Positions 3,001 through 21,153 of a DNA stretch of 64,000 nucleotides are shown here, piece by piece. The DNA lies in assembly GCA_965644295.1 (NCBI GenBank), contig CBFFRP010000217.1, forward strand, positions 186,001 through 250,000, read 5' to 3'. The DNA comes from Paraphysomonas bandaiensis. Taxonomy: Eukaryota > Protista > Chrysophyceae. The notes beneath the pieces were generated by a model that was given only the letters and a program-made list of their open reading frames with translations, did no database searches and was not told the origin of the DNA. The translations under genes were made by a program, and so were the position numbers. The first letter of the stretch is position 1. Each line of letters opens with the position of its first letter.

Positions 3001-5232
3001 GCATTACAGAACAGAGATAGACCACTTTGCCAGGTGATCTCTAACTTAGCGTGTGTGTGTAAAAAAGTGATATTTTTTCTCAGCAATTATTCCGACTGGC
3101 GACATGTATTGTAAATGCTGGAAAGACGCCAATGTTTTCTGGTGACAAGTTCACAACTACTGTTCCCTTTGACGCACCAGCCACATATTTCAGAATACTT
3201 TTCTTTCAAGTAAGATTCTACTTTTTATTGAACTGACATGATTGACATGTATTTCAGGAGGGGAATGCTCTTGACATTGCGTGTGAAATGCTTATTGATT
3301 CACATAATGACATATGGGGTATTGATCCTGCCAGAGACGAAAAACAGAAATCTCAACGTCATGGAGGTGCGCAGCACGGAGCCACAGAAAATAGTAAAAC
3401 TAATGAAAACAGCCTTCCTCAAATTGGTAATTGCCGCAAGAGAAATTCCGGCGCAGTGGAAACAATGCAAATTGACAGCGACGAGAAGCTACCTGCAATT
3501 GCTGGTGCTTCTCCGAGAATCGAGCAACAACAAGGTTTTAAATTATGTGAGGAGAGACCTGATGCATGTGAAGGAGTTCAGAAGGATGACAGCAGCGTAG
3601 ATGACGGCTGGAGTGAGGATGACGACGGAGATTACTCCGTCATGAAAGTAATCACTGAGTGGGACGAGAAGTTTGCAGAAGAGAAAGCCCGTGTGGCCAA
3701 GGACTTTGCATTATTTTCTCTGGAATGTATAGTAGAGCTGTGTGAAAGTCGATTAGAACTGCAGGACAGGGTGTATGAAAAGTCACCCGGTCTGTTTCAT
3801 TGTTTATATGGTATGTTATTGCACTGCTTTGCTCGCTGTATCTCCGTTGATATGCAGTTTAGGTTTACTGACCCCTAAAAAGCGAAACTTTGATAGAGAA
3901 ACTGACATCAAGTGTGACGTGATGGAATATACTATTGCGAGTGATGGCTCTCTTTCTCTTGGGAATTTTCGGCCACATATGGGTATTGTTGGTGCTACGG
4001 CCAAAGCAATTCGTGTTCTTGTTAGAAGGCATGCGAAGATTCGCACGCTCGTGCGCAATTCCGGCTGTGTAGTTGGTCTCATCGATGCTCTTGATATGTC
4101 GTACGCTATTGATGACAAAGTGCTTGGAATACATGTGGTAACGGCAATAGAGCAGTTAATTATAAGAAATGTCGAAGCATGGTAATCGAATCCTACTTTA
4201 AATTCTGCACTTGATATTATTCCACTTATATCAGGGATTTCGTAAAGAGTGCGGCTGGTATGAAGGGTCTCCTACAACTTTGCCACATGGGAAATGCTGC
4301 TGTTAGAATAATTGCGAGCACAGAAATTATATCTCGAATACATCCTGTACACGATCGTAGTATATATGCTGTAACTGAAGATGTACTGAACAACAATGGC
4401 CTCTCAACTATTATACGGATGCTCCATTCGAACAATGGAGGGGTTCAAACCAATGCATTGACTCTCCTGCGCTCATTATGTGTGAATAAGCTGGCATGTC
4501 GCCGAGCAGTACTGACTCCAGAATTTATTGCCGAGATTGCTGTGCTACTGTTCTCACCTGAAGTGTCTGTTGTTCGCGTGGCTTGTGAAGTTATGCTTGT
4601 TCTTGGCGCAGAAGATCAGTTCACGTTGCGCAAGCTTGTGGAGAGCATGGAAAGTAGTGTTGCGGTGTTGGAAGGATATGACACAGGGGTGCTGGACAGG
4701 TGCAATATTGCATATTTTCATTACGTATGAGTTACTTTTGTGTTCTACTATAGGTACACTAATGAAAATGGGACGGGAATGTCAATCTCTGCTCGTCTGA
4801 TGGATATTGTCAAGGGGGTGCTCTCAGTCCAACCGATAAGTGAAACAGCTTTCAAACGTAGCTGTAGTAGTCCTGGTAACATCGAAGAGTATCCAGAGAC
4901 TCTTGTTGCCATGTCTGACAGGTCAACATTGACTAATACGTTTTATACCACAGAGCGCATAACAGCAGAATTTTATGATGATCCCCGTCTAATACAAGAA
5001 CTTGTTTCCCTTTCAAATTTAGCTGCCAACGTCTTAGCAGGAATGACAGGTACGTCTATGAGAATGGTTATCCTCTTTGACCGTGTGTGCAGATAGTGAA
5101 GAGGCTAATTGGCCAGATGGTGGTGCTCCTCTACGACATACAATGAAAGCGTCAGGCTTACTTCCAGGAATAGGAGATTTGGAAGGAAGGAAGCCTAGTG
5201 ATGGAAATATATTAAATTATAAAGCGTACTAA
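1..5232 (+). CDS. Large multi-exon protein with C-terminal armadillo/HEAT-like repeats; 5' end lies outside the window
   Basis: Chain of same-strand ORFs (145-615, 695-1225, 1274-1930, 2018-2566, 2791-3114, 3288-3878, 3775-4185, 4260-4730, 4740-5096) separated by short GT-AG introns. ARM-like text 'LNNNGLSTIIRMLHSNNGGVQTNALTLLRSLC' and 'VRNSGCVVGLIDAL'. Last exon reads DSEEANWPDG...NYKAY with TAA at 5230-5232. Confidence 0.7.
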
Positions 5233-5673
5233 TTTCTAAATAATAGCGTTGTGTGAATAGCCGGTCATGTTGTCTCGTGCGTGTCAGTATTTTAATTTTA
5301 TGTGAGGTGTTGTGGCTTACATGCTACCTGGAATGTATTGTGTGTATTGTAAATTTGTAAATTATTAATTGCAGTCATTGTAAATTATTAATTTACTATG
5401 TAAATATAGCTGGCACTTGATTCGCAAAATATCTTCTGTACATTGAAATAGCATTCACATGACTACAATATACATACTCACCAGTGATAGGAGTTTTTCC
5501 AACAAACTATGCATATATTTTCGAATGTAGACCTAATATTACAATATATAAAACATAAATATATAATTCTATGATCCTATATACTATATAATAGCTTCTG
5601 TTAAGTCTGGAATGATATGCTCTTAAACGAGCTTCGTATAAATGCCGAAGTTATATGTCGACTGTTGAAATCA

Positions 5674-6537
5674 CTATTCAGCAACAGCCCACATAACCTC
5701 TTCAAATTCCATGCATATCGAAAATCCGAGGCTTTTATAACATTTCACTGCTGCTAAATTATCGCTGGCGACGTTTAGTCCTATGTACTTGATATCATCT
5801 CGAATCAACCGCTGTACTAGTGCAGCAGTGACAGAAGTAGCTAGGCCACATTTTCTGTGCAGTGGATGCACCGCTATGTTTCCCAAAGCAGCCACCCGAT
5901 GACGCTTCGAGCAAACATGCACACCTGCGATTGCACATATGTTGCTATTTGTCGTTTCACACCGCCGAGCAGAACGAATACACAGCATGCATCCAGTAGA
6001 CAGCATGCGAGGATCAAACCAATTGTTAGGGTACGCAAGTGAATAAAATGCACTGACTTCCTCATGATCTGACGGTGACAAGGGCTCCACGGCACTGGTA
6101 TCAACACCCCACACTGCATCAGCATTTGACAAATAATACCGCTGATATGGTACTCTAGACTCGATAATATATCCGTGAAGACGTGTATGAAGAGCCTCCA
6201 CTAACCCCTCTGCTAGATGAGAGTGAAACCGCTGCGGCATATCAGACACATCAAACAGTTCGCTTCTGATGAGCCTCTCACCCCACTCGACACGTGACCC
6301 CAGAGCAACCAGAGTTGGTGGGTTGGATCCTGTGTAGAGTAATACGGTGAACTGTGTGTGTTGGTTGACAGATACAGATATCCATGAGGTGTGCGGCCAG
6401 AAGATATCGTCCAGATCGCCCATCTCATACAGGTGGATGTAGGGGCTGTCGCGCAGGAAGAAAGAGGCCAGATCATCCTGTGAGTGTATCTTATGGATAC
6501 ACATGCCCTCTGTCTCTACTGGAGCTGTGTATGACAT
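5674..6537 (-). CDS. GNAT-family (FR47-like) N-acetyltransferase, intronless
   Basis: 287-aa ORF. Acetyl-CoA motif A 'LGNIAVHPLHRKCGLATSVTAAL' and motif B 'GLNVASDNLAAVKCYKSLGF'. Confidence 0.9.
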   Translation of the reverse strand: MSYTAPVETEGMCIHKIHSQDDLASFFLRDSPYIHLYEMGDLDDIFWPHTSWISVSVNQHTQFTVLLYTGSNPPTLVALGSRVEWGERLIRSELFDVSDMPQRFHSHLAEGLVEALHTRLHGYIIESRVPYQRYYLSNADAVWGVDTSAVEPLSPSDHEEVSAFYSLAYPNNWFDPRMLSTGCMLCIRSARRCETTNSNICAIAGVHVCSKRHRVAALGNIAVHPLHRKCGLATSVTAALVQRLIRDDIKYIGLNVASDNLAAVKCYKSLGFSICMEFEEVMWAVAE

Positions 6538-7104
6538 ATGTCAGATATCTGACTGCTAACACTCGTGCATTGAGCTCTTGTCTGCATCTCTAGCAGCACA
6601 GTGCATACATTACACGTACACAGTATAAGCACTCAGAATATAAAAACACAGGCTTTTAACAATCATCTATCGACTAATACCCCAAAATATTCTCTACAAA
6701 GTCGTTCAACTCCTAAATAAGTAGGTTTTTCAGGTCATAGAAAATCAGATTATCTACTAGATATTCGGATATCTTGACCTCACCAAATACTGCAGATAAT
6801 ACTACAGAGTTCTGTATTCGAATATCGTCACTCGCCAGTGAGTTGTTTTTGTGGTCCCGAACTCTCCACTTCATGTTCCGGTTTGACCGTCCGCGGATAC
6901 ATGATCTTCGTCAGTATGAATATCTGTGTAGGTGTGTGTAGGTGTGTGTAGGTGTGTGCAGGTGTGTGTATGTATCAAAATCAAATCAAATTTTTGGGTG
7001 ATTTCTGAGTGAGAAAGAGACGAGACGGAACAATCCAGCCATACGCTACCCGCCCAGCCCACATCCAGCCCACATCCACATCCACCACACTATCTGTCAA
7101 GAGA

Positions 7105-8399
7105 ATGATCGATGACAGTGTGGTTGATACAAATTCAAAGAGTGCTACATGTGTATTCGTGAAGAAGTTGTTTGATATGGTGGAGGGGTCGTCTGATGTC
7201 ATCTCATGGGTGGCAGAGGGAACGGTACGCATACATCCCTCTCATGTCCCTCTCATGTCCCTCATATATGATGACAGGCATTTGAAGTCAAGGATCCGAA
7301 GAGATTAGAGAGTGAAGTGCTGCCAGTGTTCTTCAGACACTGTCGCTTTCAGTCACTCGTCAGACAGCTTAACTTCTATGCGTTTAAGAAGGTCAGCAAA
7401 GAGAGGAGCTCGTGGGTCTATAGTCATGAGTACTTTCGACGTGATCGACCGGATCTGCTGGATAGAATGCGAAGAAAAACAAACAATCTCTGTGCGAAAC
7501 GGAATCGACGGGAGCGATCTTCCAAAAACAAGAAACGTCAATTCACTCCTTCCTCTATGTGCTCTTCGGACGACAGCTCAGAAGAGTCATGTGACAATGA
7601 GTATGCTATGACAAACACAACTTACCATTTGTTATCAATGAACCAACCCCGCCCCTCTGAAGGTGGATCATGGAACTCTCCTGGCGGGTATAACGGGTCG
7701 GGTAGTAGCTGCGACTCGGAAGAGCTTCATTCTGACGATGATGTGGACTATGAAGAGGTTTTAGGAAGCTGGGATACTGTGCATCACTTTTTTCTCAGTG
7801 GGTCGGCTGGACAGGAGAATTCAAGCTTGGGAGACCATGTGGGCAATAGCAACAGTGTGGTTCAGGTTTTACGGGCTAACGAAACGGATATGGACGCTAA
7901 AGAGTCAGCTCAGGCAGCATATCAGCAGCATCTTCTCAAGTTTTGTCTTTCACGAAACCCCTGGCAGGATACACAGGCGCTGTTTGCGGATATTCATGGA
8001 CTGTTATCTGACCACGCGGATATGACCAGCGAGCTAAATGCTTATGCCTCCGCACTGGCCCCTCCCCCCACTCGCCCCGCGCTGTCGACCTTGCTCTCCG
8101 CTTGTGTACAATTGGAGGCTCAGTCCACTGTGAAAGAAGAATCTACATCTACTGATAAGTCTACTAAGTTTTCCCCTCTTACAAATGGCACCTCTGGCGA
8201 GTCGACCATTCCTTGTATTTTGCAAGCTAACGAAATTACCCTAGTTCGCACATTTATTGCCTTCGCCCTTGCCTGCCTGCATGACGCTTGCCATAGTGAA
8301 TTGGTTGTCGTGTCTCCCGAGGTATCAGAAGGTGCATTTAAGTCCGTCCTTGGTATGTGCGTTGATAACTGGTCCAGCTATGCGAAGATTTGCACCTAG
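7105..8399 (+). CDS. Heat-shock-factor-type (HSF) DNA-binding transcription factor
   Basis: Removing intron 7225-7277 gives 'FVKKLFDMVE...VISW...GT|AFEVKDPKRLESEVLPVFFRHCRFQSLVRQLNFYAFKKV...YSHEYFRRDRPDLLDRMRRK', the HSF DNA-binding consensus. Confidence 0.92.
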
Positions 8400-8869
8400 T
8401 ATGCGACAAAACAACTATTTCAGTCATTATCTAGTAGTGTTGGGTGTGACATAGTACGCCATGGCACCTACACTGCTATGTACGTTTCAAAATATATCAT
8501 TGCATACATGTTTTTCTATATTGATGTTATTAATATTGCCGGAATCACTGGCCATTGTCATTCGTTTGAGTAATGATATTGCCAATGGGCTTGTAGTTGT
8601 AGTGGATTGTTATTGATACAAGTATTTATTTAGTGCCTATTTGAATATGAACGAAATCGGTAAGAGTAAGTTATGGCACAATTTTGATTTCAATATCAGC
8701 TATCTATGGTTTCATGTTGGAATGCATTATCTCAGTGAGAATCAGGACTGCGTATCAATTAATTGACGCAGGTTGTAGTTTTTACTTGTTGTCTCAATTT
8801 CAATTATTGCAATTATTTAGTGTTAACATACACTAGCTGTAAATATATAGCTACCTCTACGGTCATTTC

Positions 8870-9270
8870 ATTCCAGAGGCGACGACTCATTCGTATAAAC
8901 ATGAGTAGCTCTTAAATGTCGAGGAGTCAAGATCTTGCGCAAACCCGTCATATCAATCATAGCTCTACTGAACAACCTTTCAACCTTATTGGTTGTGGCA
9001 TTCAAGTGCTTCATGTTGCGGTAACGAGATTGCTGGTTAAGTCTTTCTCGCTTCCGCTACCTGCTACCATCAATCAAACGTTGCGCTGCGTCTGCCACAT
9101 TGAATCTTCACGACTGCCTTTTAGAAAGCAGCGTTATGAATAATAGTAGCACTGTCGCCCAGATGACGCTCGACAATCGGGTGCCTTATGATGAGATCAT
9201 CAAACAATGTACAAACGTCGTGGAGATCAAGCTTGTGTTCGCCTTACTTCTGTAATTGTAAGGACACTAG
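8870..9270 (-). pseudogene. Decayed hAT-superfamily transposase C-terminal fragment
   Basis: Minus strand reads LQLQK*...LDLHDVCTLFDDLIIRHP...HNAAF*KAVVKIQ, then SRYRNMKHLNATTNKVERLFSRAM...LRKILTPRHL. This is the hAT dimerisation motif (S/TNxxERxFS), with stops and frameshifts. Confidence 0.75.
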
Positions 9271-9414
9271 TTGAAACAATTCCAATTCCGACAAAACCAC
9301 TGATAGTGCCGGTCACATCATCATTAGAAGACTAATAACTTAGGTAAAATAATGCAACGTCTCAAAATAAATATTGGGCGCACTTCTAACAGAAGTACGA
9401 TATTTAATACCTAC

Positions 9415-12400
9415 CTACTGCTGAATACTGTGCATTCCTCTTAGAATAACACTGACAAGCTCATCGATATCAACATCACCGCTTCCATCCTTGTCGGCAA
9501 CAGCAATCATAGCGTCCACTTCTTCCCATGACTTTTCAATTCCAAGATTGATGAGAGATTGAAATAACTCTTTCCTGTCAATTGATCCTGATCGGTTGGT
9601 GTCAATGAAAGAGAACAAATCTAGTATTCTTTCTTTGAGATACTTCGCCCGCTCATCAGAATATATATCGTCGTTCTCTTCGTCTGAACCCCCACTTTCA
9701 GACTTGTCCTCGCTTTCTCTATCACCATAAGAATCAACCCTTTGCGCTTCGAAATGATTCCTGATGTTCTCGGAAAAACTTGCTCTGAATTCAGAGGACT
9801 TACGATAATGTGTACGGTCGTAAGCCTTTAGCGCATCAAGCCATCGTGAATACGGAGCGCCATAACGTCTAGTGGTACCACTGCTAATAGTTATATCCTC
9901 ATAGAAAGAATCTGCGGAAACTGAGCGCTGCATATCGTTTACTGTAGAATACTTGGCGTCTTTGCTGTCTGCGGAGGAAGCTGTCGATATAGAGCTGATT
10001 AAGTTTTCTAATACTAGTACACTGATGGCGTTCAGGACTTTGGCTGATTTTCCTTCAATATCATTCTTGAGAGGTGCTGGCGGGAGTTTTGGAACATATT
10101 GGTGCCCTTTAACTTCACTGAAAAGTGATAGAATAAAGTTATATCGCTCAGAAAACGTCATCCTTCCAAATACAGTCCATAAATCTCCGTCAGAAAAGTA
10201 ATATGATTCGGTGTACTCCTCTGCCACTGCGGTGTCTACTCGTATCCCGAGCTTAGACAACAAGCAAAATTCACCGAATTGATAACCAGCCTGGTGAAGA
10301 TCACCCATTCTCTCATGTTTTAACTTTAGCAACATTAAAGCTCCAATGTCGTGGCCTTCTACAGAAGAGTCTTTGGCTAACTTCACCGATACACAACCGG
10401 ACAAAACAAAGAAAACCGAAGCACCAGGATCCGACTCGGAGTAGACATTGGTGGATGGAAGAAGCATCTATAAACTCTAGTTATATCAAAATGCATATTA
10501 TAGAAAAGAATACCTGTGGCTTTAGTATTCCAGCTATTGCATTGCGCAGATCTGGCCGAATGCTCTTAAGTAGCGGGACAGTGTTCATGACATCTTTATT
10601 GAACTCCCATGCTATCGATTCTGCAAGAGGGGTAGATAAAAGTCGTGACAAGGACCCTCTATCATCACCCGTACTTCGGTACCTATTCCAAAGGGTGTGA
10701 TAATGACAACTGATTCTATCTCGAAGGTCTTGAGGGAGGTTTCGGTAATTCATGTATCTATCAATGGTTCGAAGTTTCTCGCTGAAGGAAGCTGATCCAG
10801 ACTTGTCACCAATCTTCAAATATGTCATCATTTGCCCACACAAATTGGCCGCCATACACGCAGCTGTGATAGCAACCACTATTTCATTCAGCACCTCGGC
10901 ATTAGTAAATGGAGCAATATCCCCTGTAAAATATTAAATACCATTTTAGAAGTCGAACCCAATTCCTTACCATACCCAACAGATGTCAAAACTTGTACGA
11001 TGAAATAGAGCGACCTTTCGTAGCAGATGAGAGCAGTGCTGCTGCAAACGTTGTGCTTTCCTTTGCTGTCATCAAACTTTGCATAGCCGTATTCGATTAC
11101 CCATGTTGTCCTATAGTTGTCCTCAATATAGCGATGAGTACAGAAGTACATACATGCCAACAAATGGGTGGCAACTACATATGAAAGCAGACTCCACACA
11201 ACCCTCATTGTTTGCTTATAAAAAGTTAGACCACGATCTTTCATATGGCTTTCAACCTATTAATCAAAAGCCAATGTCAACAAAATCATTTCACTTCAAA
11301 GCAAACAAACCATTGATACTCTTTCGAATAAGTTTCCTAGGCGCAGTAAATGAATCAATCGTAAAGCAAATATATTCCCAAACTCAATATCGCTGGCAAG
11401 AACCAGCATCTCCATTGGAATACTTCCTAGCACATCATACATCAAACTTGCCGAGCTTTTGTACAGCTGTCCTGGATATGGCGTTTCATGAAGCGAAACT
11501 GGAAACAAGTAAAGACGAAAGAGGAGCTCAAGTATGCATAATCCATCCACAACAAAATCAATGAACATGTAGTATTGTTGGTACTCCTCGACATGCTCAC
11601 CAAACATATACGTAATTTCAAATGTTATCACAAATGAGTAATATAACAGTGCAAGAAGGCCAAAAATGTCAACACATAATTTGAAAGTTCCATGACTATT
11701 AGCCAATTTTTGCCAAATATTAGGTGTTACATCTGCATCTAGAGAGCCCACAAGTTTGGATAATTTGGTTCCTTGGTTTTTCACTGCACTAAGATTTTTC
11801 GTAACTGCAGCGTTGCGCCTTGCGTTTGCTTGTTGCAACCTGACAGCAAAGGTCATGCAGTGTTATTCAGTCATCAGGGACGCCAATACACCGTCCTACC
11901 GGTACAGAGCTTGTATAGTGGCATCGGCATCAAAGTCACAGTCTCTGAGCTCGCCATCCAGATCTTCTTTACACAATGAGTAGCATACGCACAGAGTAAG
12001 TGCTATAGCCGAGGCAGTGCGCCTGCTGCGGAACACAAGACCAGTTTCCCCAAAGAAGCGACCATTCTGCTTATGAAAATAACCTGCAATATGTAAAAGC
12101 TTTGGCAGCTTACCTGAAGCTGAGCATACACTGTTTGTCGATCTGCGCTCGTAATCTGTAAAAAAATCAGGCATATGACCAAGACCTAGGTCCGGTACCT
12201 CAACAACGCCACTGTCTATGAAAAACATCTTGTCTCCTAAATCTCCGCTACTGATTATTACATCTTCTGGAGCGTATATTCCCTGTTTGAGCTTCATGCA
12301 CAGCTTTGCCAATATATCATCCGGACAGAAATCAAACAACTGACACCCCTTAAAAAATTTCACTTTTATTTGGACATGTGCGGCCACCTGACAAGAAATG

Positions 12401-15400
12401 ATTGAAATTCCCTGCATCAAAGGGTTCATACCTGTAGAGAATAGGGTAGATCTCGGAGAAGCATATCTTCTTTCTTAAGTATCAAGCCAGAGTCACTTGT
12501 CAGAAACTTCATCGATTTATCAACCTGAAGCAAATCTCTTACGGTCACATCATGACTATATATGTCGACTATACCCTTTTAATTAGCATGCGAGGCACTT
12601 TTCTTGATTTCAGTATAGTGTGAAACACTTCGGATGCATTGGTTACAGCTGTTCTTTCTTCGTCTTCGCTTGTCATAAGAGCAATAATTTCACCAATGAT
12701 CATGGCACTGACGGCGATTCCGAAAAACATTGCCAGAAACATATATGTTGTCTCGGATTGATTCATGGGATATGTGTCACCCACCGTATACAACACAGTA
12801 GTCGGAATCGCCCAGTTAATCGCCCGCATATATCGATTTAACTGTGTCCCTCCATTTTGAGGAAGACGACCTCTATATATTTGAAATTGGACCCACGTGT
12901 CCTTGTACTCACATGCGGTACCGTACATCGCATTTGGTTCAGCCTTGCAATTATCGTCTTGCGTCTTTACAAATCAGCAATTAGCATAACACAACGACGC
13001 CATCACAAAGGTACAATACCTCAGTGAAGAGTAAGAGGCCGCATGCCAACCAATGGCACACAAGAACAACTGCAACTATAACCTGGCCACACAAATTGGT
13101 AAGTTTGTCCACTGGAACATAAGTGTGTACCTGAAGAAGTCTCATCACAAGAAATGTCAGCTTCAAATCATCGAGTAAAGCTTCAAATGATCGAAACATC
13201 CAAATTCCTTTTAACAAAAGCAGTAACTTGGGAAGCCGTAAAATACTTAACGCAAAAAATAATTCTCCGTCGTCTAAATTGAAGCCTAGCAACAGCAGGG
13301 CGAATAAGTCATAAGGAAATCTTGCTGAAACATCCAATATGAAAGTGTTCTGCATATATACATGATTCAAATGACTTGGGCGCATCAACTGCCGCCCATT
13401 ATGCACTTTGGGGAAGAATGTCCAATTTAAGTAGCTATCTATTAATAGAATAACATCCAACGAGTAGTCAATTGAAAAATAAAGCACATGAATTCGCTCC
13501 GCTACTCGCAGAGGAATCATCCCCAGGTTGTAGAGTAGTATAAATAAGAGCAACGTATCCCAAGCGTGGCGTGGCAACGAGCCATCCTTAAAATACTTCT
13601 GATATTCCCTGAACTGAAGGCCTTGCAGGTTAGGAAGAGTATCTCTCGAGGATACCGAAGTCTTTTGCTCAAAACTAAATACCGATTTACTATCCGATGC
13701 GTAGCTATCTTTTTTTATTTCTTCGGCTAACGAAAGTTTCTCTATGTTTTTTGAATTCTTTTCTTCTAATATAATCGAAATTGCTTCGACAATGTCTTCA
13801 CCTTCAATTGGAAACGCTTCCAGAACCTACGTTACACGTCAGCAGTAAGTATAATACACTGTATAGCTTGACCATTTCAAAGTGATCCTTATGAAGGACA
13901 TATGTCTCTGTATAATCAACAGCATATGCGCTAGCGGTACGTTTCGCCACCTATATGTAAACAAGCATAGATAAAAATAGATTAGTTTCTATTTTTGGCA
14001 GTACTAACTTTAAGTAAGCAACTCTCTCCAATGTAATTTCCATTTTGTAGAGTAGCATAAACAACACTTCTATCGGCAGAACAAACTACAACATGACCAG
14101 ACTCAATGATAAACATCTCCTTTCCATATTCCCCATGCACTATAATATCATCTCCATCTAAAAATAGGCGATGTGACAAGTATTTCAATATTCTATGAGT
14201 CATTGGGGCTGTTATATTTGCAAAGAACGGGACTGCATTGATGAGTTTCCCAATCACACAGTTTCTGACCGCGTCACGAAGTGGCTGCGAGAGTCCATTC
14301 ATTAGCTCCGCCTCGTCAACACCTTTAGACCGCGCCCACGAGTAGTGAAAGAAGTATAAAATTCTTTCTTCCAGATCTGGGCTGAGACCACGATATCGTA
14401 TTAGCTCCTGTACATCAGAAAGCTTTGAGTGAAAGTTCTTCTTTTCGGTATTCATATTTCCCATCAGAGAAGCTATGCTTCCGATCAGTCCATTCATCGT
14501 TTGGCACCCAATAACGTGTATGACACAGCATACAGCCATTTCAACAATATTAGTGCTTATCATATCCCCTGCTCCTGCTGTTGTTAGGCTATTTATGGCC
14601 CTGGCGATAACGGTTACCAGTAACGTAGTCAAACAAAATAACGTACCAGTACATAGATCGTCGATAAGGAGCAACTCCGAATAGGCGCGGATATTCAACA
14701 CTTAGCACATCAGAGTGCTTATCTTGTAGTTTCCAGTTGCTCCTATACCCAAACAAGTTTGTACTAATATCCGCAGTCAATTGCCATATACATCCCATCC
14801 AATGACACAACTACAATCAAAACTTAGCCAGACATCGACACCGCCAGTATTAGAAATACCTGAAACAGAGCAAAGTACAGCTTTCCCATTCGCTTTACTT
14901 CAAATGAGAAATCAAAATACTTTGTACTGGCTAGTATTCTTTCGAATTTCTCAGTGTATTCTGACAACCGCAAAAGTAGAACAACCTTTGTCATTCTCAA
15001 AATAGAAATATATCGAGAATCTAAGTAGACAGCGAAGATATCGATGGGCAAGATTGGCAGCACCTGCCAATAAATATTTTTGCTTTCGCAAAAAAAATTG
15101 AAAATATCGACGGCTCGAGTGTAGGTGGATCTATCTCGAACATAGAAAAACATAAGACTCCGAAATACTAAGTCCACTGCAAAAATGAAATCCACAGCAA
15201 AGCATAGAGATAATACTTGCTTGTACCGTTCGAAAAATGGAGAATCGAACGTGTTTGCCAGCAAATAGGGAATTGTGATTGTGTGATATATGAGACACAT
15301 AAATACAACCATTTCCCACATGCGTCGAAAGTTTGACCCTGGTTTCATGGCAGTTGCCCACCTCGTCTTAACTTCTACATGCAAACCACGCTGGATTGTC

Positions 15401-17361
15401 GATGGGGTCGTTTCAGATGCACTATCATCTACAGGAGTTTCTTCGAAAATTATTCCCACCCTTCTCAAACGAGAAATTGCAGCAGAATTAACATCAGGTG
15501 GAGCAAACTGTCTATAATCCATATCTGTCATATACAACCTACATATCCGTTGAAACGAAGCTCGACTCAGAAACAGCATCTCTGTAACACAGTTCCCTAC
15601 GAGTAATGCAGATGAGTACTTAAACTTTTGCACCAGGGCATGGGCACTAAAGCTCTCCCCTCTACGCAAGGCTTTCACAATTTCCACTCCCTCATTACCC
15701 GAGACATCCGTGTGAACGTAAGCCTCTCCCCTAACGAGAGAAAGAGTTAAAATTCAAGTATATATAGACAGATATATAAAACCTAGACAAAATATGCATG
15801 CCTTTGGCAACACTTCCCGGACTGACTATGACATCATGCGAGGAATACAGTACATTTCGAGTTTCTGCTGCAAGAGCATTGAGAATCGCTAATCGTAAAT
15901 TTCGCATGAAATGCACATTCTTAAGGAAATCTCTTACTGTCGCCTGCCGTACTCGGGCCTGAATATTAGGAGGAAGCTCTGCCAAAACCTGGAGTGTGCG
16001 CTTAGAGGAGTAAAACATAATGATATCGCCATACTTGTTCTTCATCAAGGCCATTCAACACTTTGTACTGATGATCGTAGTACAACTTTATCCTATCCAC
16101 GAGGTCTCTAGGAAGTGATCTAAACTGACTATATTTTTCTAACCTCCTGAGTTGTTCTCGATATTTGATATGGGCGGAATCAAAAGCAGTCACAAGCAGT
16201 ATTATATTTCCAATAGCATATTGTGCCATGATGTGAGAAAAAAACATGAATAAAATGCTGAACGTGGTATCCTGGTTGGATACAGGGACCACATCTCCAT
16301 ACCCCACGGTTTGCTGATACAGTACCCCTTAGTTTACACTATAAAAGCATAAAAAACTTACCGCAGTACTAACTGCATAGTACAGAGAGCGTATATATCT
16401 ATACATCAGCGATCGAATAAATATGAAGTTTTGATCAGACTCGTTAAACTCAACCATGGGTACCCTGGAGGCATCTGACAACCAGGTATCGACTACAGGA
16501 TCTGCTCGACTCATTGATATTACAGCAACCTTGTACATAAGGCATGCGCCGACATGAGCGTATACAATCATCGACATGGTTACGTATAAAGCTCGTTTTG
16601 TAGATGGACCGGTGATTAAATGCTTCGTAGCAAGTAAATCTACGAATTCCTTTGTGTACGTCACCACAAAGCAGCTTCGAAGAAATTTTAGTATCCGTAA
16701 GAGATAATATTTTTCATAGCCAATCCAATAGGAGATGACATCATAAGGAATTACCATGATTGTCTCCAATACGATTAATAAACTAAACTTTCTTGGTATC
16801 ACATGACCCCGACTGTACCTATTTTTATTGTATTGACATTGATCATCTTTGAGTTTCACATTCCTATTGAATGCTTCAAGCATTTCGTTGTAAAGCGAGA
16901 AAGCGTCCTGGGAATTCGACATCTGAATATCACCAGAAGAATCAGCTGCGGTATATAACACACCAACATTTTTCTGTGGAGCAACTGCTACTTTGTTATA
17001 TGCCCATACGCTCTCAAGATATAGTGTAATATCGATGATGAAGAAGAGGTCAGCTGTATAGTCGAAACACAGTGCGAGCCAATTAGATGGAATGAATTTA
17101 ACGTGCCAGTTAAACGCCACTCTGAAAGATATGGAAAACAAATAATATAAAGCGGCGATTAGTCTGATGGTTATCCAGTAGGCTTGTCCTCTAACACCCC
17201 GCACACCCGCCCCATCTATACGCGTCATATATACACACATATACTTATGATACAGGCGAGAATAGGCTCTACTTGGAAGCCACTTTCGAGTCGTTCATAT
17301 CAACTTCTATTCGTTCAGTGGAATGGGGTAGTATGGACAGCTCACATGCATCGTCCCTCAT
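9415..17361 (-). CDS. Four-repeat (putative 24-TM) cyclic-nucleotide-binding-domain ion channel with C-terminal EF-hand pair
   Basis: Four successive 6TM-pore-C-linker-CNBD units. Pores: QTVGYGD (~16300), TTAGAGD (~14570), LYTVGD (~12785), TSVGYGD (~10975, across an intron). CNBD motifs GESFSAH, GNYIGESCLL, FFGETGL..RRTASA, FGEFCLL. EF-hands DTNRSGSIDRKE and DKDGSGDVDIDE. Start codon (17361) and last exon are approximate. Confidence 0.85.
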
Positions 17362-17987: not shown

Positions 17988-20281
17988 TCAAGCCTCTACA
18001 CTATCTGCATTTGCCAATTTAAGCAAATAGTTCGTAAGCAGTTTCACGCCGTAACCAGTAGGTTTATGTTCCCCATCATTCCACACAGGCCCCGCCATAT
18101 CAATGTGCGCCCACTTGTTAGTTGTTACGAATTCCTTCAAGAATAAAGCTGCGGTGATAGATCCTGCTCCGCCGGCACCTACATTCTTGATATCAGCAAT
18201 CTTAGACTTTATATTCTTTTTGTAACTGGCACGCAACGGAAGGGGCCAGAGGTTGTCTCCTGATACCTGTGCATAACGGTTACCATCACTATGCGTATCA
18301 AAGTGTCGTTACCTCCCCAGCATGTTCAAGGGCCTGTCTCATTTCAATATCGTTACAATAGAGAGCAGATACCTCTTGGCCCAGAGCCACTACACATGCC
18401 CCGGTCAATGTAGCCAAATCGACAATAGCATCCGGTTTAAGTGAATCTGCAAAAACAAGAGCGTCTGCAAGCGTCAAGCGTCCCTCTGCATCAGTATTAA
18501 TAATTTCAATCATTTTCCCATTTGAAGCACGGACAATGTCTCCCGGTCTCATCGCCTCCGCGGAAATCATGTTTTCGCAAACCGCAGATATGAAGTGCAC
18601 TTCAAGGTTCTGAGAGACAACAATTACATAAGAGAAAAGTGGATATCAAAGTACTTACCTCCGGTTCAAGCTCGGCAATTGCCCGAGCACAACCTATCAC
18701 AGCCCCAAGGCCACCCATATCGACTTTCATCATCTCTATTGTGGCTGCAGCTCCAACCTATCAGTATGGTTCGTGAACAATGTACACAAAAGACCTACTG
18801 TATAACGCATACAACACTATGGTACAATATTTCACCTTCAAATTGTATCCACCGCTGTCAAACGTGAGACCTTTACCAACCAGCGCCACTCTAGTAACTT
18901 TTGCGTCTTTCTTCTGGTTAGGACAGCGGTAGACCATGTGCACAAACTGAGGAGGGAACATCGATCCCTGCTGTACAGCAAGAAACCCTCCCATTCCTTT
19001 AGCTTCGCATTCCTCCTACCAACATATATTACAGCATACCTATATAAAATACGGTGCCGTGCGCACAACAATTCAAATTTCTATAAGTTATCCTATCCGT
19101 ACTTATTATATTACATGTACAGAATGCGATAGAAAAATGGGGACATGTGAGATACCTGTCCTAGTACTGTGCATGACAGAGAGGGGAACTCATCAGCCAG
19201 TTGTCGAGCTAGTTTTGATATTTCGAGAGGAGTCTTGCTATTAGCGGGAGCACCTACAGAAGAAAGAAAATTAATACAGCGAGATTACAATACCAGCCAT
19301 TCAAAATAACATTGCTAAAATATACGCAACAGCTATTATACCAACGAGATCTCTAGCAAAAGTGACTCCATTAGCTATCGACATTGCCGTCTTGGCTTTA
19401 GCCTGAAGCTCATCTTTCACAGAAGACTGTACTCCTACTACTGATATTGTTGCAAGTCCACTGTCATCATCAGTGTTGTCCGGAGTAGGTTTCTTGAATC
19501 TCTTATCGTTGTAGGCACCTTCAAGGGCATTGGAAAAAACCTGTGGTACACCTAAGCCACAATTGTTTCAACAAACACTTCTTACCCTGGTCGTACTTTC
19601 TGTTGTAACTGTGGGCGGCAATATGACACCGACGTGACGGGATTTTGTTTGTTTGGCCAGCTGAGGGATACATTTTCCAAACACGGACTCAATGTCAAGC
19701 TCTTGATCACAACATCCAACCAAAGCAACATGTTTGTATCCTGAGGGTGACGCAGCGGGAAGTCGTACAATATACTTCTCATCTTCCGAAGCAGTGAAAG
19801 TTTTCTGGTATTGTTGTTAATCAAAATAATAGCATCTGACTTCAATATCCGAACCTCATTCAGAATGTCTACAACCACTTGACGCAACTCGCTTTCCAAC
19901 GATGAAGGAATTGAGTCGATAAGAGATGATTTGGCACCCTCGACTTTGTCTCCAGGCTATACAGTGAAGAGTTAGAAGGGAACAGTGCTTCACGTACATA
20001 GCCACTGCACCTTTGAAAAAGGAATAATCAGCAAGTCGGCTCCCTTGGCATGCGTTTCATGCACATCTATGCTAATTACTCTCTGATATACTTTACTATT
20101 AAGTATAAAATAAAAATAACGTAACCACACACCTGTCCGGAGCTCTGATAGGGAGCAAGAGAGGAATACACACCTGCATGACACACAGATAAACGACTAT
20201 GAAGGCAATGGAAATATTATTACTTGAAAAGTGTCGTCGGAGAAGGCGAGATCTCTGCAGTGACAACCGCAAGGACAACAT
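17988..20281 (-). CDS. LAP: M17 leucyl aminopeptidase with probable mitochondrial presequence
   Basis: Motifs [55 protein letters not shown]. Arg/Ser/Leu-rich N-terminus [20 protein letters not shown]. Multi-exon. Confidence 0.95.
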
Positions 20282-20388
20282 TATTCGGTTCGATATTAAA
20301 GCTTGAGTGCAATTCAGTTGCTAATATGCGTTCCTAGAATGATACATGAGCGACAAGACCACTCCACTGGAATACATGATGTACTGCT

Positions 20389-20868
20389 GTATGTATGTAT
20401 GTATGTATGTATGTATGTATGTATGTATGTATGTATGTATGTATGTATGTATGTATGTATGTATGTATGTATGTATGTATGTATGTATGTATGTATGTAT
20501 GTATGTATGTATGTATGTATGTATGTATGTATGTATGTATGTATGTATGTATGTATGTATGTATGTATGTATGTATGTATGTATGTATGTATGTATGTAT
20601 GTATGTATGTATGTATGTATGTATGTATGTATGTATGTATGTACTGTATGTATGTATGTATGTATGTATGTATGTATGTATGTATGTATGTATGTATGTA
20701 TGTATGTATGTATGTATGTATGTATGTATGTATGTATGTATGTATGTATGTATGTATGTATGTATGTATGTATGTATGTATGTATGTATGTATGTATGTA
20801 TGTATGTATGTATGTATGTATGTATGTATGTATGTATGTATGTATGTATGTATGTACTGTATGTATGT
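20389..20868. repeat. (TATG)n microsatellite, ~480 bp, in the divergent LAP/MFS intergenic region
   Basis: Read directly. Two single-C interruptions (tactg) at ~20644 and ~20857. Confidence 0.98.
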
Positions 20869-21153
20869 TTCGCAATATGTGTGCAAAAACTCCAGTTATC
20901 AGCATCAAAATCCGATTTGAGCTTCAAAACAGCAGTATACTGTGCTGTGTACAGCAGTACAATTGATCTATGAATTATTCGGAGGGAGTTTAGGTGGCAT
21001 ATATTTCGGTGCAATGCCCCTCTAAGCCATTGAACGCACCCTCAATGCAACATACACAAGTATACAATCTACATTCAACACCTTTAAATGACTACATGGT
21101 CCAATAGGGTACCTGTAGTTGTCTCGTGTACCTGCTGTGGCCTTTAGAGTGTC

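What the first reader, a model, noticed from the sequence alone, without database searches (positions are those of the whole stretch)
9415..17361. Single-chain four-repeat CNBD channel with an asymmetric selectivity filter
Seen: four concatenated 6TM+pore+CNBD repeats whose pore loops differ: TVGYGD, TAGAGD, LYTVGD, SVGYGD. Established: KCNH/HCN/CNG channels are tetramers of single repeats; the known concatenated CNGK (tetraKCNG) channels of animal sperm are K+-selective with GYG-type filters; K+ selectivity relies on four-fold TxGYG, while CNG channels lack the YG. Inference: this is a pseudo-tetrameric, probably non-K+-selective (possibly Ca2+-permeable) cyclic-nucleotide channel that evolved pore asymmetry, as Nav/Cav did, but on the CNBD-channel scaffold.
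Basis: partly seen in the sequence, partly recalled or inferred. Interest (0 to 1): 0.75.

Follow-up and report, generated by a model that had tools for sequence, protein, structure and literature searches.

The report
Four-repeat cyclic-nucleotide channel, asymmetric pore
A diatom-like alga makes, from one spliced gene, an ion channel of four different cyclic-nucleotide-type subunits joined in one chain; two of its four pore loops have lost the potassium-filter motif in a conserved way, and the family arose separately from the animal sperm channel CNGK.

Summary
Spliced RNA contigs show one mRNA with 17 short GT..AG introns. It encodes a 2,328-residue protein: four repeats of 6TM + pore + C-linker + CNBD, then a C-terminal EF-hand pair.

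The gene belongs to a large, uncharacterised superfamily of four-repeat CNBD channels. This genome has two close paralogs. More than 100 sequence clusters exist in public data, including oomycete proteins auto-named [quoted passage not shown].

Its repeats are orthologous repeat by repeat to the oomycete and metagenomic members. All repeats of animal CNGK form a separate clade (99/99; AU p=0.008). The joining into one chain was therefore independent.

The odd loops are conserved, and R3 is the most conserved of the four. Only CNBD2 and CNBD3 keep the canonical phosphate-binding cassette. Loss of K+ selectivity is plausible but untested, and no sequence feature specifically supports Ca2+ permeation.

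The scan had already found a paralog on other DNA of this genome (s1-440812). I found no paper describing the family.

The parts
9058..17344 (-). Whole transcribed gene: 18 exons and 17 introns of 43-60 nt. The outer ends are extrapolated from the length of the RNA contig.
9415..17240 (-). Coding region including the stop codon; 2,328 residues.
   Evidence: an in-frame stop lies upstream of the first ATG
15415..17240 (-). Repeat 1 (aa 1-560): S1-S6 with a roughly 70-residue insert between S2 and S3, a canonical pore loop, C-linker, and a degenerate CNBD (cassette FSAH...KYSSA, no Gly-Glu and no Arg).
16293..16310 (-). Pore loop 1, TVGYGD (canonical K+-type). Intron 16314-16361 lies just upstream.
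13716..15414 (-). Repeat 2 (aa 561-1060): S1-S6, a non-canonical pore loop, C-linker, and a canonical CNBD.
   Evidence: (SthK E=4e-28 over pore to CNBD)
14564..14581 (-). Pore loop 2, TAGAGD. It aligns with TIGYGD of SthK, so Tyr is replaced by Ala. Most family members have TSGVAD here.
13927..14032 (-). Phosphate-binding cassette of CNBD2, IGESCLLKVAKRTASA (split by intron 13951-14008). Gly-Glu and Arg-Thr-Ala are kept and are invariant across family A.
11779..13715 (-). Repeat 3 (aa 1061-1590): S1-S6, the most divergent pore loop, and a canonical CNBD.
12776..12793 (-). Pore loop 3, LYTVGD, within WAIPTTVLYTVGDTYPMN. It lacks the Thr and the first Gly of TVGYG. It is the most conserved of the four loops in family A.
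12007..12054 (-). Phosphate-binding cassette of CNBD3, FGETGLVFRSRRTASA (canonical).
9982..11778 (-). Repeat 4 (aa 1591-2140): S1-S6, a canonical pore loop, and a CNBD with an altered cassette (FGE...IRVDTA).
10919..10983 (-). Pore loop 4, SVGYGD, interrupted by intron 10924-10970 (GY-G/-D). The unspliced frame reads SVGYGK.
9436..9630 (-). C-terminal EF-hand pair. Both 12-residue loops are canonical (DTNRSGSIDRKE, DKDGSGDVDIDE).
   Evidence: (EF-hand_7 E=8e-10, EF-hand_1 E=3e-10)

Best explanation
This gene encodes a single-chain, pseudo-heterotetrameric ion channel of the CNBD-channel superfamily. Four diverged 6TM + pore + C-linker + CNBD repeats fold around one central pore, and an EF-hand pair follows. 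The repeats have split their roles. R1 and R4 supply canonical K+-type filter strands but have degenerate nucleotide sites. R2 and R3 supply conserved non-canonical strands (TAGAGD, LYTVGD) and keep the canonical cyclic-nucleotide-binding cassettes. The most likely working: cAMP or cGMP binding at CNBD2 and CNBD3 opens the gate through the C-linkers. With only 3-4 basic residues per S4, voltage probably has a weak or modulatory role. Ca2+ binding at the EF-hands probably feeds back on gating. Only two adjacent strands can build a full four-site K+ filter, so I expect weak K+ selectivity, that is, a non-selective cation pore of the HCN/NaK/CNG kind (about 55% likely). The gene is one of three paralogs in this genome. 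It belongs to a stramenopile and marine-protist superfamily whose four-repeat chain arose independently of animal CNGK. Shown: transcript, architecture, loop sequences and their conservation, repeat orthology, separation from CNGK. Inferred: ligand gating, Ca2+ feedback, ion selectivity.
For: One spliced mRNA and one open 2,328-codon frame. Four pore-to-CNBD modules were detected with E near 1e-103 to 1e-107, a self-consistency check on a profile built from the repeats themselves; homologs give four modules each. The repeat-2 exon matches the bacterial cAMP-gated K+ channel SthK from pore to CNBD (E=4e-28), then CNGA, LliK and HCN. Relatives carry 4x Ion_trans, 2-4x cNMP_binding and, in some, EF-hands. 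A family-A homolog, P0170, is one uninterrupted 2,551-codon ORF on a 226-kb contig. In eleven family-A proteins (the ten relatives are only 38-42% identical to this one), loop windows score 0.79-0.89 conservation against a protein-wide mean of 0.64, with R3 highest. The CNBD2 cassette is invariant, CNBD3 is canonical here and in the EF-hand subgroup, and CNBD1 and CNBD4 are altered. The two paralogs keep the same loop pattern and intron positions. In the careful tree, A+B+C repeats group by repeat number (R2 99/83, R3 100/99, R4 100/99), while all 20 repeats of the CNGK group form one clade (99/99). The AU test rejects joining protist R3 with CNGK R3 (p=0.008). Oomycete proteins join repeat by repeat (SH-aLRT 84-99).
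Against: No electrophysiology or structure exists for any member. K+ filters use backbone carbonyls, so a strand with altered side chains (R2 keeps Thr and the first Gly) may still coordinate K+. Family B keeps three canonical strands and could be K+-selective. No acidic ring points to Ca2+ selectivity. Ligand identity (cAMP or cGMP) cannot be read from the sequence. The groups for the AU test were named after the tree was seen. Gene conversion among CNGK repeats could mimic an independent origin. The tree has no single-repeat outgroup. The RNA runs are labelled 'RNA?' by the tool; their spliced contigs are my grounds for treating them as RNA.
Confidence: 0.72

Rival explanations
1. It is functionally a CNGK-like, K+-selective cyclic-nucleotide-gated channel. 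The altered R2 and R3 strands still offer backbone carbonyls, and cyclic-nucleotide rises hyperpolarise the cell as in sea-urchin sperm.
For: Same overall architecture as CNGK. Two loops are perfect TVGYGD/SVGYGD and all four keep the trailing Gly-Asp. R2 keeps Thr and the first Gly and aligns without gaps to the SthK filter. NCBI names the oomycete relatives 'tetrameric potassium-selective cyclic nucleotide gated channel'.
Against: R3 lacks both the Thr and the first Gly of TVGYG. From established K+-channel knowledge, that Gly is needed for the filter backbone conformation. CNGK is defined by GYG/GFG in its pore (PMC4749565). The database name is automatic. The repeats are not orthologous to CNGK repeats.
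Confidence: 0.25
2. The central pore does not conduct, or conducts only rarely. The protein then acts as a cyclic-nucleotide/Ca2+ sensor, or conducts through another path such as a voltage-sensor domain, as the HCN-like proton channel HCNL1 does.
For: A precedent exists within CNBD channels (title and abstract of PMC7306766, listed). Bulky hydrophobic residues (Leu, Tyr, Val) stand at filter positions of R3.
Against: All four pore loops are more conserved than the rest of the protein, including canonical GYG in R1 and R4. That is hard to explain for a dead pore. S4 segments carry few charges and show no HCNL1-like features that I could identify.
Confidence: 0.06
3. The four-repeat reading is an artefact: neighbouring single-repeat or two-repeat genes were merged by assembly or by read-through contigs.
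For: Contigs cannot by themselves prove one molecule (tool caveat). Only two-repeat tandem CNBD channels have been reported for stramenopiles (PMC7576140).
Against: The R1/R2 junction lies inside a single exon. The spliced frame is open across all junctions with no stop for 2,328 codons. Three runs give the same joints. Two collinear paralogs exist in the same genome. Dozens of four-repeat homologs were found, one of them an intronless single ORF.
Confidence: 0.02

Closest known systems
Animal and choanoflagellate CNGK / tetraKCNG (sea-urchin and zebrafish sperm channel; here represented by P0009 from Anneissia japonica and P0026 from Tubulanus polymorphus)
   Same: Four 6TM + pore + CNBD repeats in one polypeptide. 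Not all CNBDs are equivalent: in ApCNGK only one site activates (my own knowledge of Bonigk 2009, not read here).
   Different: CNGK has GYG/GFG in all four loops, whereas this protein has it in two. CNGK repeats are described as nearly identical, without specialisation (PMC6259924); here the repeats are 18-24% identical with split roles. All CNGK repeats form their own clade, so the architecture is convergent. CNGK has no EF-hand tail.
Oomycete four-repeat proteins: Achlya hypogyna 'tetrameric potassium-selective cyclic nucleotide gated channel' (P0174) and an Aphanomyces euteiches hypothetical protein (P0175)
   Same: They belong to the same superfamily, with each repeat grouping with the same-numbered repeat here. 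Their repeat-3 loop is also non-canonical (LLVVSSG).
   Different: Only 22-23% identical to the nearest family-A query. R1, R2 and R4 are all G[FL]G, so three strands are canonical rather than two. They are uncharacterised and named automatically.
[quoted passage not shown] 2020, PMC7576140)
   Same: CNBD-channel repeats joined in one chain within the SAR supergroup, with repeat-specific divergence and partly reduced CNBDs.
   Different: They have two repeats, not four. That survey reported no tandem channels in diatoms or labyrinthulomycetes, and four-repeat forms only in Holozoa. Their relation to this family was not tested here.
SthK (bacterial cAMP-gated K+ channel), CNGA/CNGB, HCN
   Same: Best solved-structure matches, running from filter through S6 and C-linker to CNBD. 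Native CNGA1/CNGB1 (3:1) is also an asymmetric pore (my own knowledge).
   Different: Those channels are tetramers of separate single-repeat subunits. The filters are TIGYGD (SthK), CIGYG (HCN) or TIGETPPP (CNG).
Nav/Cav/NALCN 4x6TM channels
   Same: A single chain of four specialised repeats, with an asymmetric filter built from four different loops.
   Different: No CNBDs and a different pore type (DEKA/EEEE rings). They are not homologous at the repeat-joining step. PMC6259924 states that only this lineage adopted an asymmetric architecture, and this family is a counter-example.

Membership tests
CNBD-channel superfamily (HCN/CNG/KCNH/SthK type) | 6TM voltage-sensor-like and pore module followed by C-linker and cyclic-nucleotide-binding domain | tested here: met
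   The repeat-2 exon aligns to SthK residues 194-388 (filter to CNBD), E=4e-28. Pfam finds cNMP_binding, Ion_trans and Ion_trans_2 in the exons. The hydropathy pattern fits.
CNBD-channel superfamily (HCN/CNG/KCNH/SthK type) | Channel assembled from four separate single-repeat subunits | tested here: not met
   All four repeats lie in one 2,328-codon frame on one spliced mRNA.
CNGK / tetraKCNG | Four 6TM+CNBD repeats in one polypeptide | tested here: met
CNGK / tetraKCNG | Canonical GYG/GFG K+ signature in the pore loops (PMC4749565) | tested here: not met
   Only R1 and R4 carry GYG. R2 is TAGAGD and R3 is LYTVGD. CNGK references have GYG or GFG in all four loops.
CNGK / tetraKCNG | Common descent: each repeat orthologous to the same-numbered CNGK repeat | tested here: not met
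   All 20 CNGK-group repeats form one clade, 99/99 and 100. The AU test rejects a clade of protist R3 with CNGK R3, p=0.008.
CNGK / tetraKCNG | K+ selectivity and activation by nanomolar cGMP | not testable with these tools
   Needs electrophysiology.
Stramenopile/marine-protist four-repeat CNBD channels (unnamed; families A, B, C here) | Repeat-by-repeat orthology with the other members | tested here: met
   Clades A+C 100 for every repeat. A+B+C R2 99/83, R3 100/99, R4 100/99. With oomycetes 84-99.
Stramenopile/marine-protist four-repeat CNBD channels (unnamed; families A, B, C here) | Non-canonical repeat-3 loop following a W-A-[IL]-P-T pore-helix end | tested here: met
   WAIPTTVLYTVGD here, WAIPTMVLY[TV]VGD in family A, and WA[LI]PTLVVVVIGD in family B.
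Family A (this gene, two paralogs, P0001, P0004, P0164-P0173) | R1 QTVG[FY]GD, R2 T[SA]G[VAS][AGC]D, R3 LY[TV]VGD, R4 TSVGYGD | tested here: met
   This gene's R2 (TAGAGD) is a variant of the commoner TSGVAD.
Nav/Cav/NALCN four-domain channels | Filter ring of DEKA/EEEE/EEKE type and no CNBDs | tested here: not met
   The loops are K+-channel derived, four CNBDs are present, and the best PDB matches are all CNBD channels.

The most novel reading that the evidence does not exclude
Family-A channels are the missing link between cyclic-nucleotide and Ca2+ signalling in diatoms. They would be cAMP- or cGMP-opened, Na+/Ca2+-permeable pores whose built-in EF-hands close the feedback loop. They would also be the second lineage in evolution, after Nav/Cav/NALCN, to turn a joined K+-channel-type tetramer into an asymmetric pore with new selectivity.
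Probability: 0.22. Interest if true: 0.88.

Novelty: new variant of a known kind. Interest (0 to 1): 0.7.

Why it matters
Ion-channel reviews treat Nav/Cav/NALCN as the only joined 4x6TM lineage whose repeats became asymmetric. They describe CNGK as four near-identical repeats (PMC6259924). The broad 2020 survey of CNBD channels found four-repeat forms only in animals and choanoflagellates, and no tandem forms in diatoms (PMC7576140).

This gene and its relatives show a second, independent joining of CNBD subunits, with conserved repeat specialisation in both the filter and the ligand sites. It is a natural experiment on how many canonical strands a K+ filter needs. It is also a concrete candidate for how diatoms and oomycetes turn cAMP or cGMP signals into membrane-potential or Ca2+ signals. 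Roles for those signals in CO2 sensing, pheromone responses and zoospore behaviour are from my own knowledge, not tested here.

The family is abundant in marine data: more than 100 clusters at 50% identity reached E<=1e-30 with one exon as query.

Tried and rejected
- Pfam on unspliced ORF pieces gave only weak, partial hits because 17 introns cut the domains. I therefore built the gene model from RNA joints.
I replaced it with profile-based extraction of each pore-to-CNBD module.
- The joined 2,328-residue model has no reference. It was built and used only inside local scripts (translation, MAFFT, local BLAST/HMMER against sequences already fetched, trees). All database searches were made exon by exon by reference. 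No database search, Pfam scan, structure prediction or complex prediction was run on the joined protein. That step is left out.
- No structure or complex prediction was run. The full protein exceeds the 1,200-residue limit, and a partial fold cannot show the assembled filter.
- The word search sees only proteins of similar length and found no named diatom member. This says little about absence.
- The organism's name was not determined. At least seven silicon-transporter loci and a neighbouring HSF-type gene fit a diatom.
- Considered and rejected: assembly fusion (see rivals); degenerate, decaying pore loops, since the loops are more conserved than the rest of the protein; derivation from animal CNGK by transfer, since the clades are separate.
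- No single-repeat outgroup was available, so the tree is unrooted.
Full report
**What is in the sequence**

The region holds one gene on the minus strand. Raw ORFs are short and interrupted, as expected for a eukaryote with small introns.

I laid contigs of four public runs on 10401-16400. The run search showed three runs holding 0.71-0.76 of the sampled words and one holding 0.49, against 1.00 in DNA runs. One search listed 15 joints, each skipping 43-60 nt with CT..AC ends on the + strand, which is GT..AG for the gene. One 7,454-nt contig of run X1 crosses every joint. Runs X2 and X3 show the same joints in two contigs each.

Two more introns were placed indirectly. Intron 15989-16034 came from the contig's own coordinates. 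Intron 16314-16361 came from the contig piece ending at 16313, the GT..AG ends and the reading frame.

The spliced mRNA (about 17344 to 9058) has one open frame of 2,328 codons, from ATG 17240 to the stop at 9415-9417. The junction between repeats 1 and 2 lies inside a single exon (15730-14860). The other two repeat junctions are crossed by RNA-supported splices.

Caveat: the tool labels these runs "RNA?". My grounds for calling them RNA is that their contigs lack all introns.

**Architecture**

The protein has four repeats (aa 1-560, 561-1060, 1061-1590, 1591-2140). They align along their length at 18-24% pairwise identity. Each repeat shows the hydropathy pattern of S1-S6 and an S4 with only 3-4 basic residues. 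Each also has a pore loop, a C-linker and a CNBD.

The repeat-2 exon alone matches the bacterial cAMP-gated K+ channel SthK from the filter to the CNBD (E=4e-28). CNGA, LliK and HCN follow. The last exon carries an EF-hand pair (EF-hand_7 E=8e-10) with two canonical 12-residue loops.

| Repeat | Pore loop after splicing | Window coordinates | Phosphate-binding cassette of the CNBD |
|---|---|---|---|
| R1 | TVGYGD | 16293-16310 | degenerate: FSAH...KYSSA, no Gly-Glu, no Arg |
| R2 | TAGAGD | 14564-14581 | canonical: IGES...KRTASA |
| R3 | LYTVGD | 12776-12793 | canonical: FGET...RRTASA |
| R4 | SVGYGD | 10919-10983 (split by an intron) | altered: FGE...IRVDTA |

The repeats that keep the K+ signature have poor ligand sites. 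The repeats with odd filters keep good ligand sites.

**It is a family, not a one-off**

The genome holds two collinear full-length paralogs, on contigs C133 and C126. They have the same loop pattern (QTVGFGD, TSGVAD or SAGTAD, LYVVGD, SVGYG-D), shared intron positions at loops 1, 2 and 4, and EF-hands. A more distant multi-repeat CNBD gene lies on C146.

An exhaustive HMMER search with the 197-residue repeat-2 exon found 6,185 clusters at E<=1e-3 and 123 at E<=1e-30. Most of the best hits are 2,000-3,000 residues long with four matched stretches. Extracting every pore loop gives recognisable groups:

| Group | Members | R1 | R2 | R3 | R4 |
|---|---|---|---|---|---|
| Family A | this gene, P0001, P0004, P0164-P0173 | QTVG[FY]GD | T[SA]G[VAS][AGC]D | WAIPTxVLY[TV]VGD | TSVGYGD |
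| Family C | P0005, P0011 | canonical or near-canonical (TVGFGD; TVGHGD in P0005) | SIGF[YP]D | TLT[MS]E[VS]I[DV]D | canonical |
| Family B | many metagenomic proteins | canonical | canonical | LVVVVIGD | canonical |
| Oomycete proteins (B-like loops) | P0174 (Achlya hypogyna), P0175 (Aphanomyces euteiches) | canonical | canonical | LLVVSSG | canonical |
| Animal CNGK | P0009 (a crinoid), P0026 (a nemertean) | GYG/GFG | GYG/GFG | GYG/GFG | GYG/GFG |

Further groups (P0034-type and P0100-type) have other asymmetric loop sets.

One family-A homolog, P0170, is a single uninterrupted 2,551-codon ORF on a 226-kb contig. This is independent support for the single chain.

**The odd loops are conserved, not decaying**

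The ten family-A relatives are only 38-42% identical to this protein overall. The mean column conservation across the eleven aligned sequences is 0.64. The four loop windows score 0.82, 0.79, 0.89 and 0.84, and the non-canonical R3 loop is the highest. The CNBD2 cassette is invariant. The CNBD3 cassette is canonical in this gene and in the EF-hand-bearing subgroup, but broken in the P0001 subgroup.

**Relation to CNGK**

I built a careful maximum-likelihood tree of 96 pore-to-CNBD modules from 24 four-repeat proteins. Support values are ultrafast bootstrap / SH-aLRT.

- All 20 modules of the CNGK group form one clade at 99/99.
- Protist modules group by repeat number: A+C at 100 for each repeat, and A+B+C at 99/83 (R2), 100/99 (R3) and 100/99 (R4).
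- An AU test rejects the best tree that joins protist R3 with CNGK R3 (lnL difference 60, p=0.008).

Adding the two oomycete proteins in a quick tree puts each of their repeats with the same-numbered A+B+C repeat (SH-aLRT 97, 86, 84, 99). The CNGK group stays apart at 100.

The four-repeat chain is therefore shared by oomycetes and this diatom-like alga, and it was joined independently of animal CNGK.

Caveats: the tree is unrooted and has no single-repeat outgroup. The test groups were named after the tree was seen. Concerted evolution among CNGK repeats could inflate their clustering. Long-branch proteins (P0099, P0080, P0122) were kept and dropped. P0041, P0060 and P0087 were left out because fewer than four full modules were detected.

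**Organism**

The name is hidden. The 62.6-Mb genome has at least seven silicon-transporter loci above the Pfam cut-off. An HSF-type gene lies next door. Both fit the "marine diatom" reading of earlier scan notes.

**Literature**

- PMC4749565 defines CNGK as a four-repeat channel with canonical GYG/GFG, found in animals and a choanoflagellate.
- PMC7576140 surveyed eukaryotic CNBD channels. It reported two-repeat tandem forms in oomycetes and dinoflagellates, four-repeat forms only in Holozoa, and no tandem forms in diatoms.
- PMC6259924 states that CNGK shows no repeat specialisation and that only Nav/Cav/NALCN adopted an asymmetric architecture.
- Five further full-text searches found no description of a stramenopile four-repeat CNBD channel.
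- The Achlya database name [quoted passage not shown] is not discussed for a stramenopile in any paper these searches returned.

The held library lacks most subscription journals, so this absence is not proof.

**How it most likely works**

The following are inferences, not results.

- *Ligand gating.* CNBD2 and CNBD3 are the working ligand sites, which recalls ApCNGK, where one site suffices (my own knowledge of Bonigk 2009). Ligand binding would open the S6 gate through the C-linkers.
- *Ca2+ feedback.* The EF-hand pair suggests Ca2+ feedback, analogous to calmodulin control of CNG channels.
- *R2 strand.* A K+ filter needs four T-V-G-Y-G strands to build four sites. Channels that keep only the inner sites (NaK, HCN) lose selectivity. 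This is established knowledge, not tested here. R2 keeps the Thr and the first Gly, so it may still contribute to the inner sites.
- *R3 strand.* R3 lacks both of those residues and cannot adopt the canonical strand.
- *Geometry.* The two canonical strands (R1 and R4) are neighbours in the ring, not opposite each other.

On this basis I put about 55% on weak K+ selectivity (a non-selective cation pore), about 25% on a still K+-selective pore, and about 6% on a non-conducting pore. Nothing in the sequence specifically indicates Ca2+ selectivity. There is no Glu/Asp ring beyond the Asp that follows ordinary GYG.

**Verdict**

This is a new variant of a known kind. The same family was already noted by this scan on a paralog elsewhere in this genome (s1-440812). 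I reached the same reading and tested its independence claim here.

Database searches were made exon by exon by reference. The joined protein was built and used only inside local scripts. No search or fold of the joined model was made.

Noticed in passing
G000:C133 about 207,500-218,300 (-) (L006+L009) and G000:C126 about 80,800-88,500 (+) (L007+L010): Two collinear full-length paralogs of this gene. They are 33-65% identical exon by exon and have the same four-loop pattern, shared intron positions at pore loops 1, 2 and 4, and C-terminal EF-hands. One is probably the 2,413-residue gene of scan note s1-440812.
   Followed up: partly
G000:C146:152000-161999 (L008), minus strand: A more distant multi-repeat CNBD-channel gene. 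At least three or four pore-to-CNBD modules match this protein at 21-24% identity, so the genome holds a second kind of tandem CNBD channel.
   Followed up: partly
window 7317-8399 (+): A 360-residue ORF whose start matches the HSF-type DNA-binding domain (E=1.5e-13). It is the downstream neighbour of the channel gene.
   Followed up: no
window 17988-18236 (-): An exon matching the C-terminal end of the Peptidase_M17 (leucyl aminopeptidase) catalytic domain (E=2e-19). It lies just upstream of the channel gene on the same strand.
   Followed up: no
window 20303-21014: Six overlapping ORFs of 190-226 codons are open in all six frames over the same 700 bases. The enclosing 2-kb bin has the strongest GC skew of the window (+0.24). 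This is probably stop-poor, low-complexity or repeat DNA.
   Followed up: no
window 10865, 11686, 15419: Run X4 (labelled organism B) carries the same spliced transcript with three single-base differences (T>A, A>G, G>A). A second strain or sister species therefore expresses the gene.
   Followed up: no
L011 (ENA contig, 226 kb), 3001-10656: The family-A homolog P0170 is encoded without any intron, whereas this gene has 17. Intron load in this family differs greatly between lineages.
   Followed up: no
G000, contigs C348, C406, C398, C150, C405, C298, C149: At least seven loci match the silicon-transporter family PF03842 above its cut-off, most as two half-matches per gene. This fits a silicifying alga such as a diatom.
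   Followed up: partly
proteins P0034, P0071, P0093, P0103, P0116, P0125 and P0100, P0137, P0144: Other four-repeat CNBD families in public data carry their own conserved asymmetric loop sets, for example LLGYDD / TVGYGD / LVGSRE / TLFYGD and TLGQGD / TVGYGD / VVCFGD / TVSYGD. Filter asymmetry has evolved, or been kept, in several lineages.
   Followed up: partly
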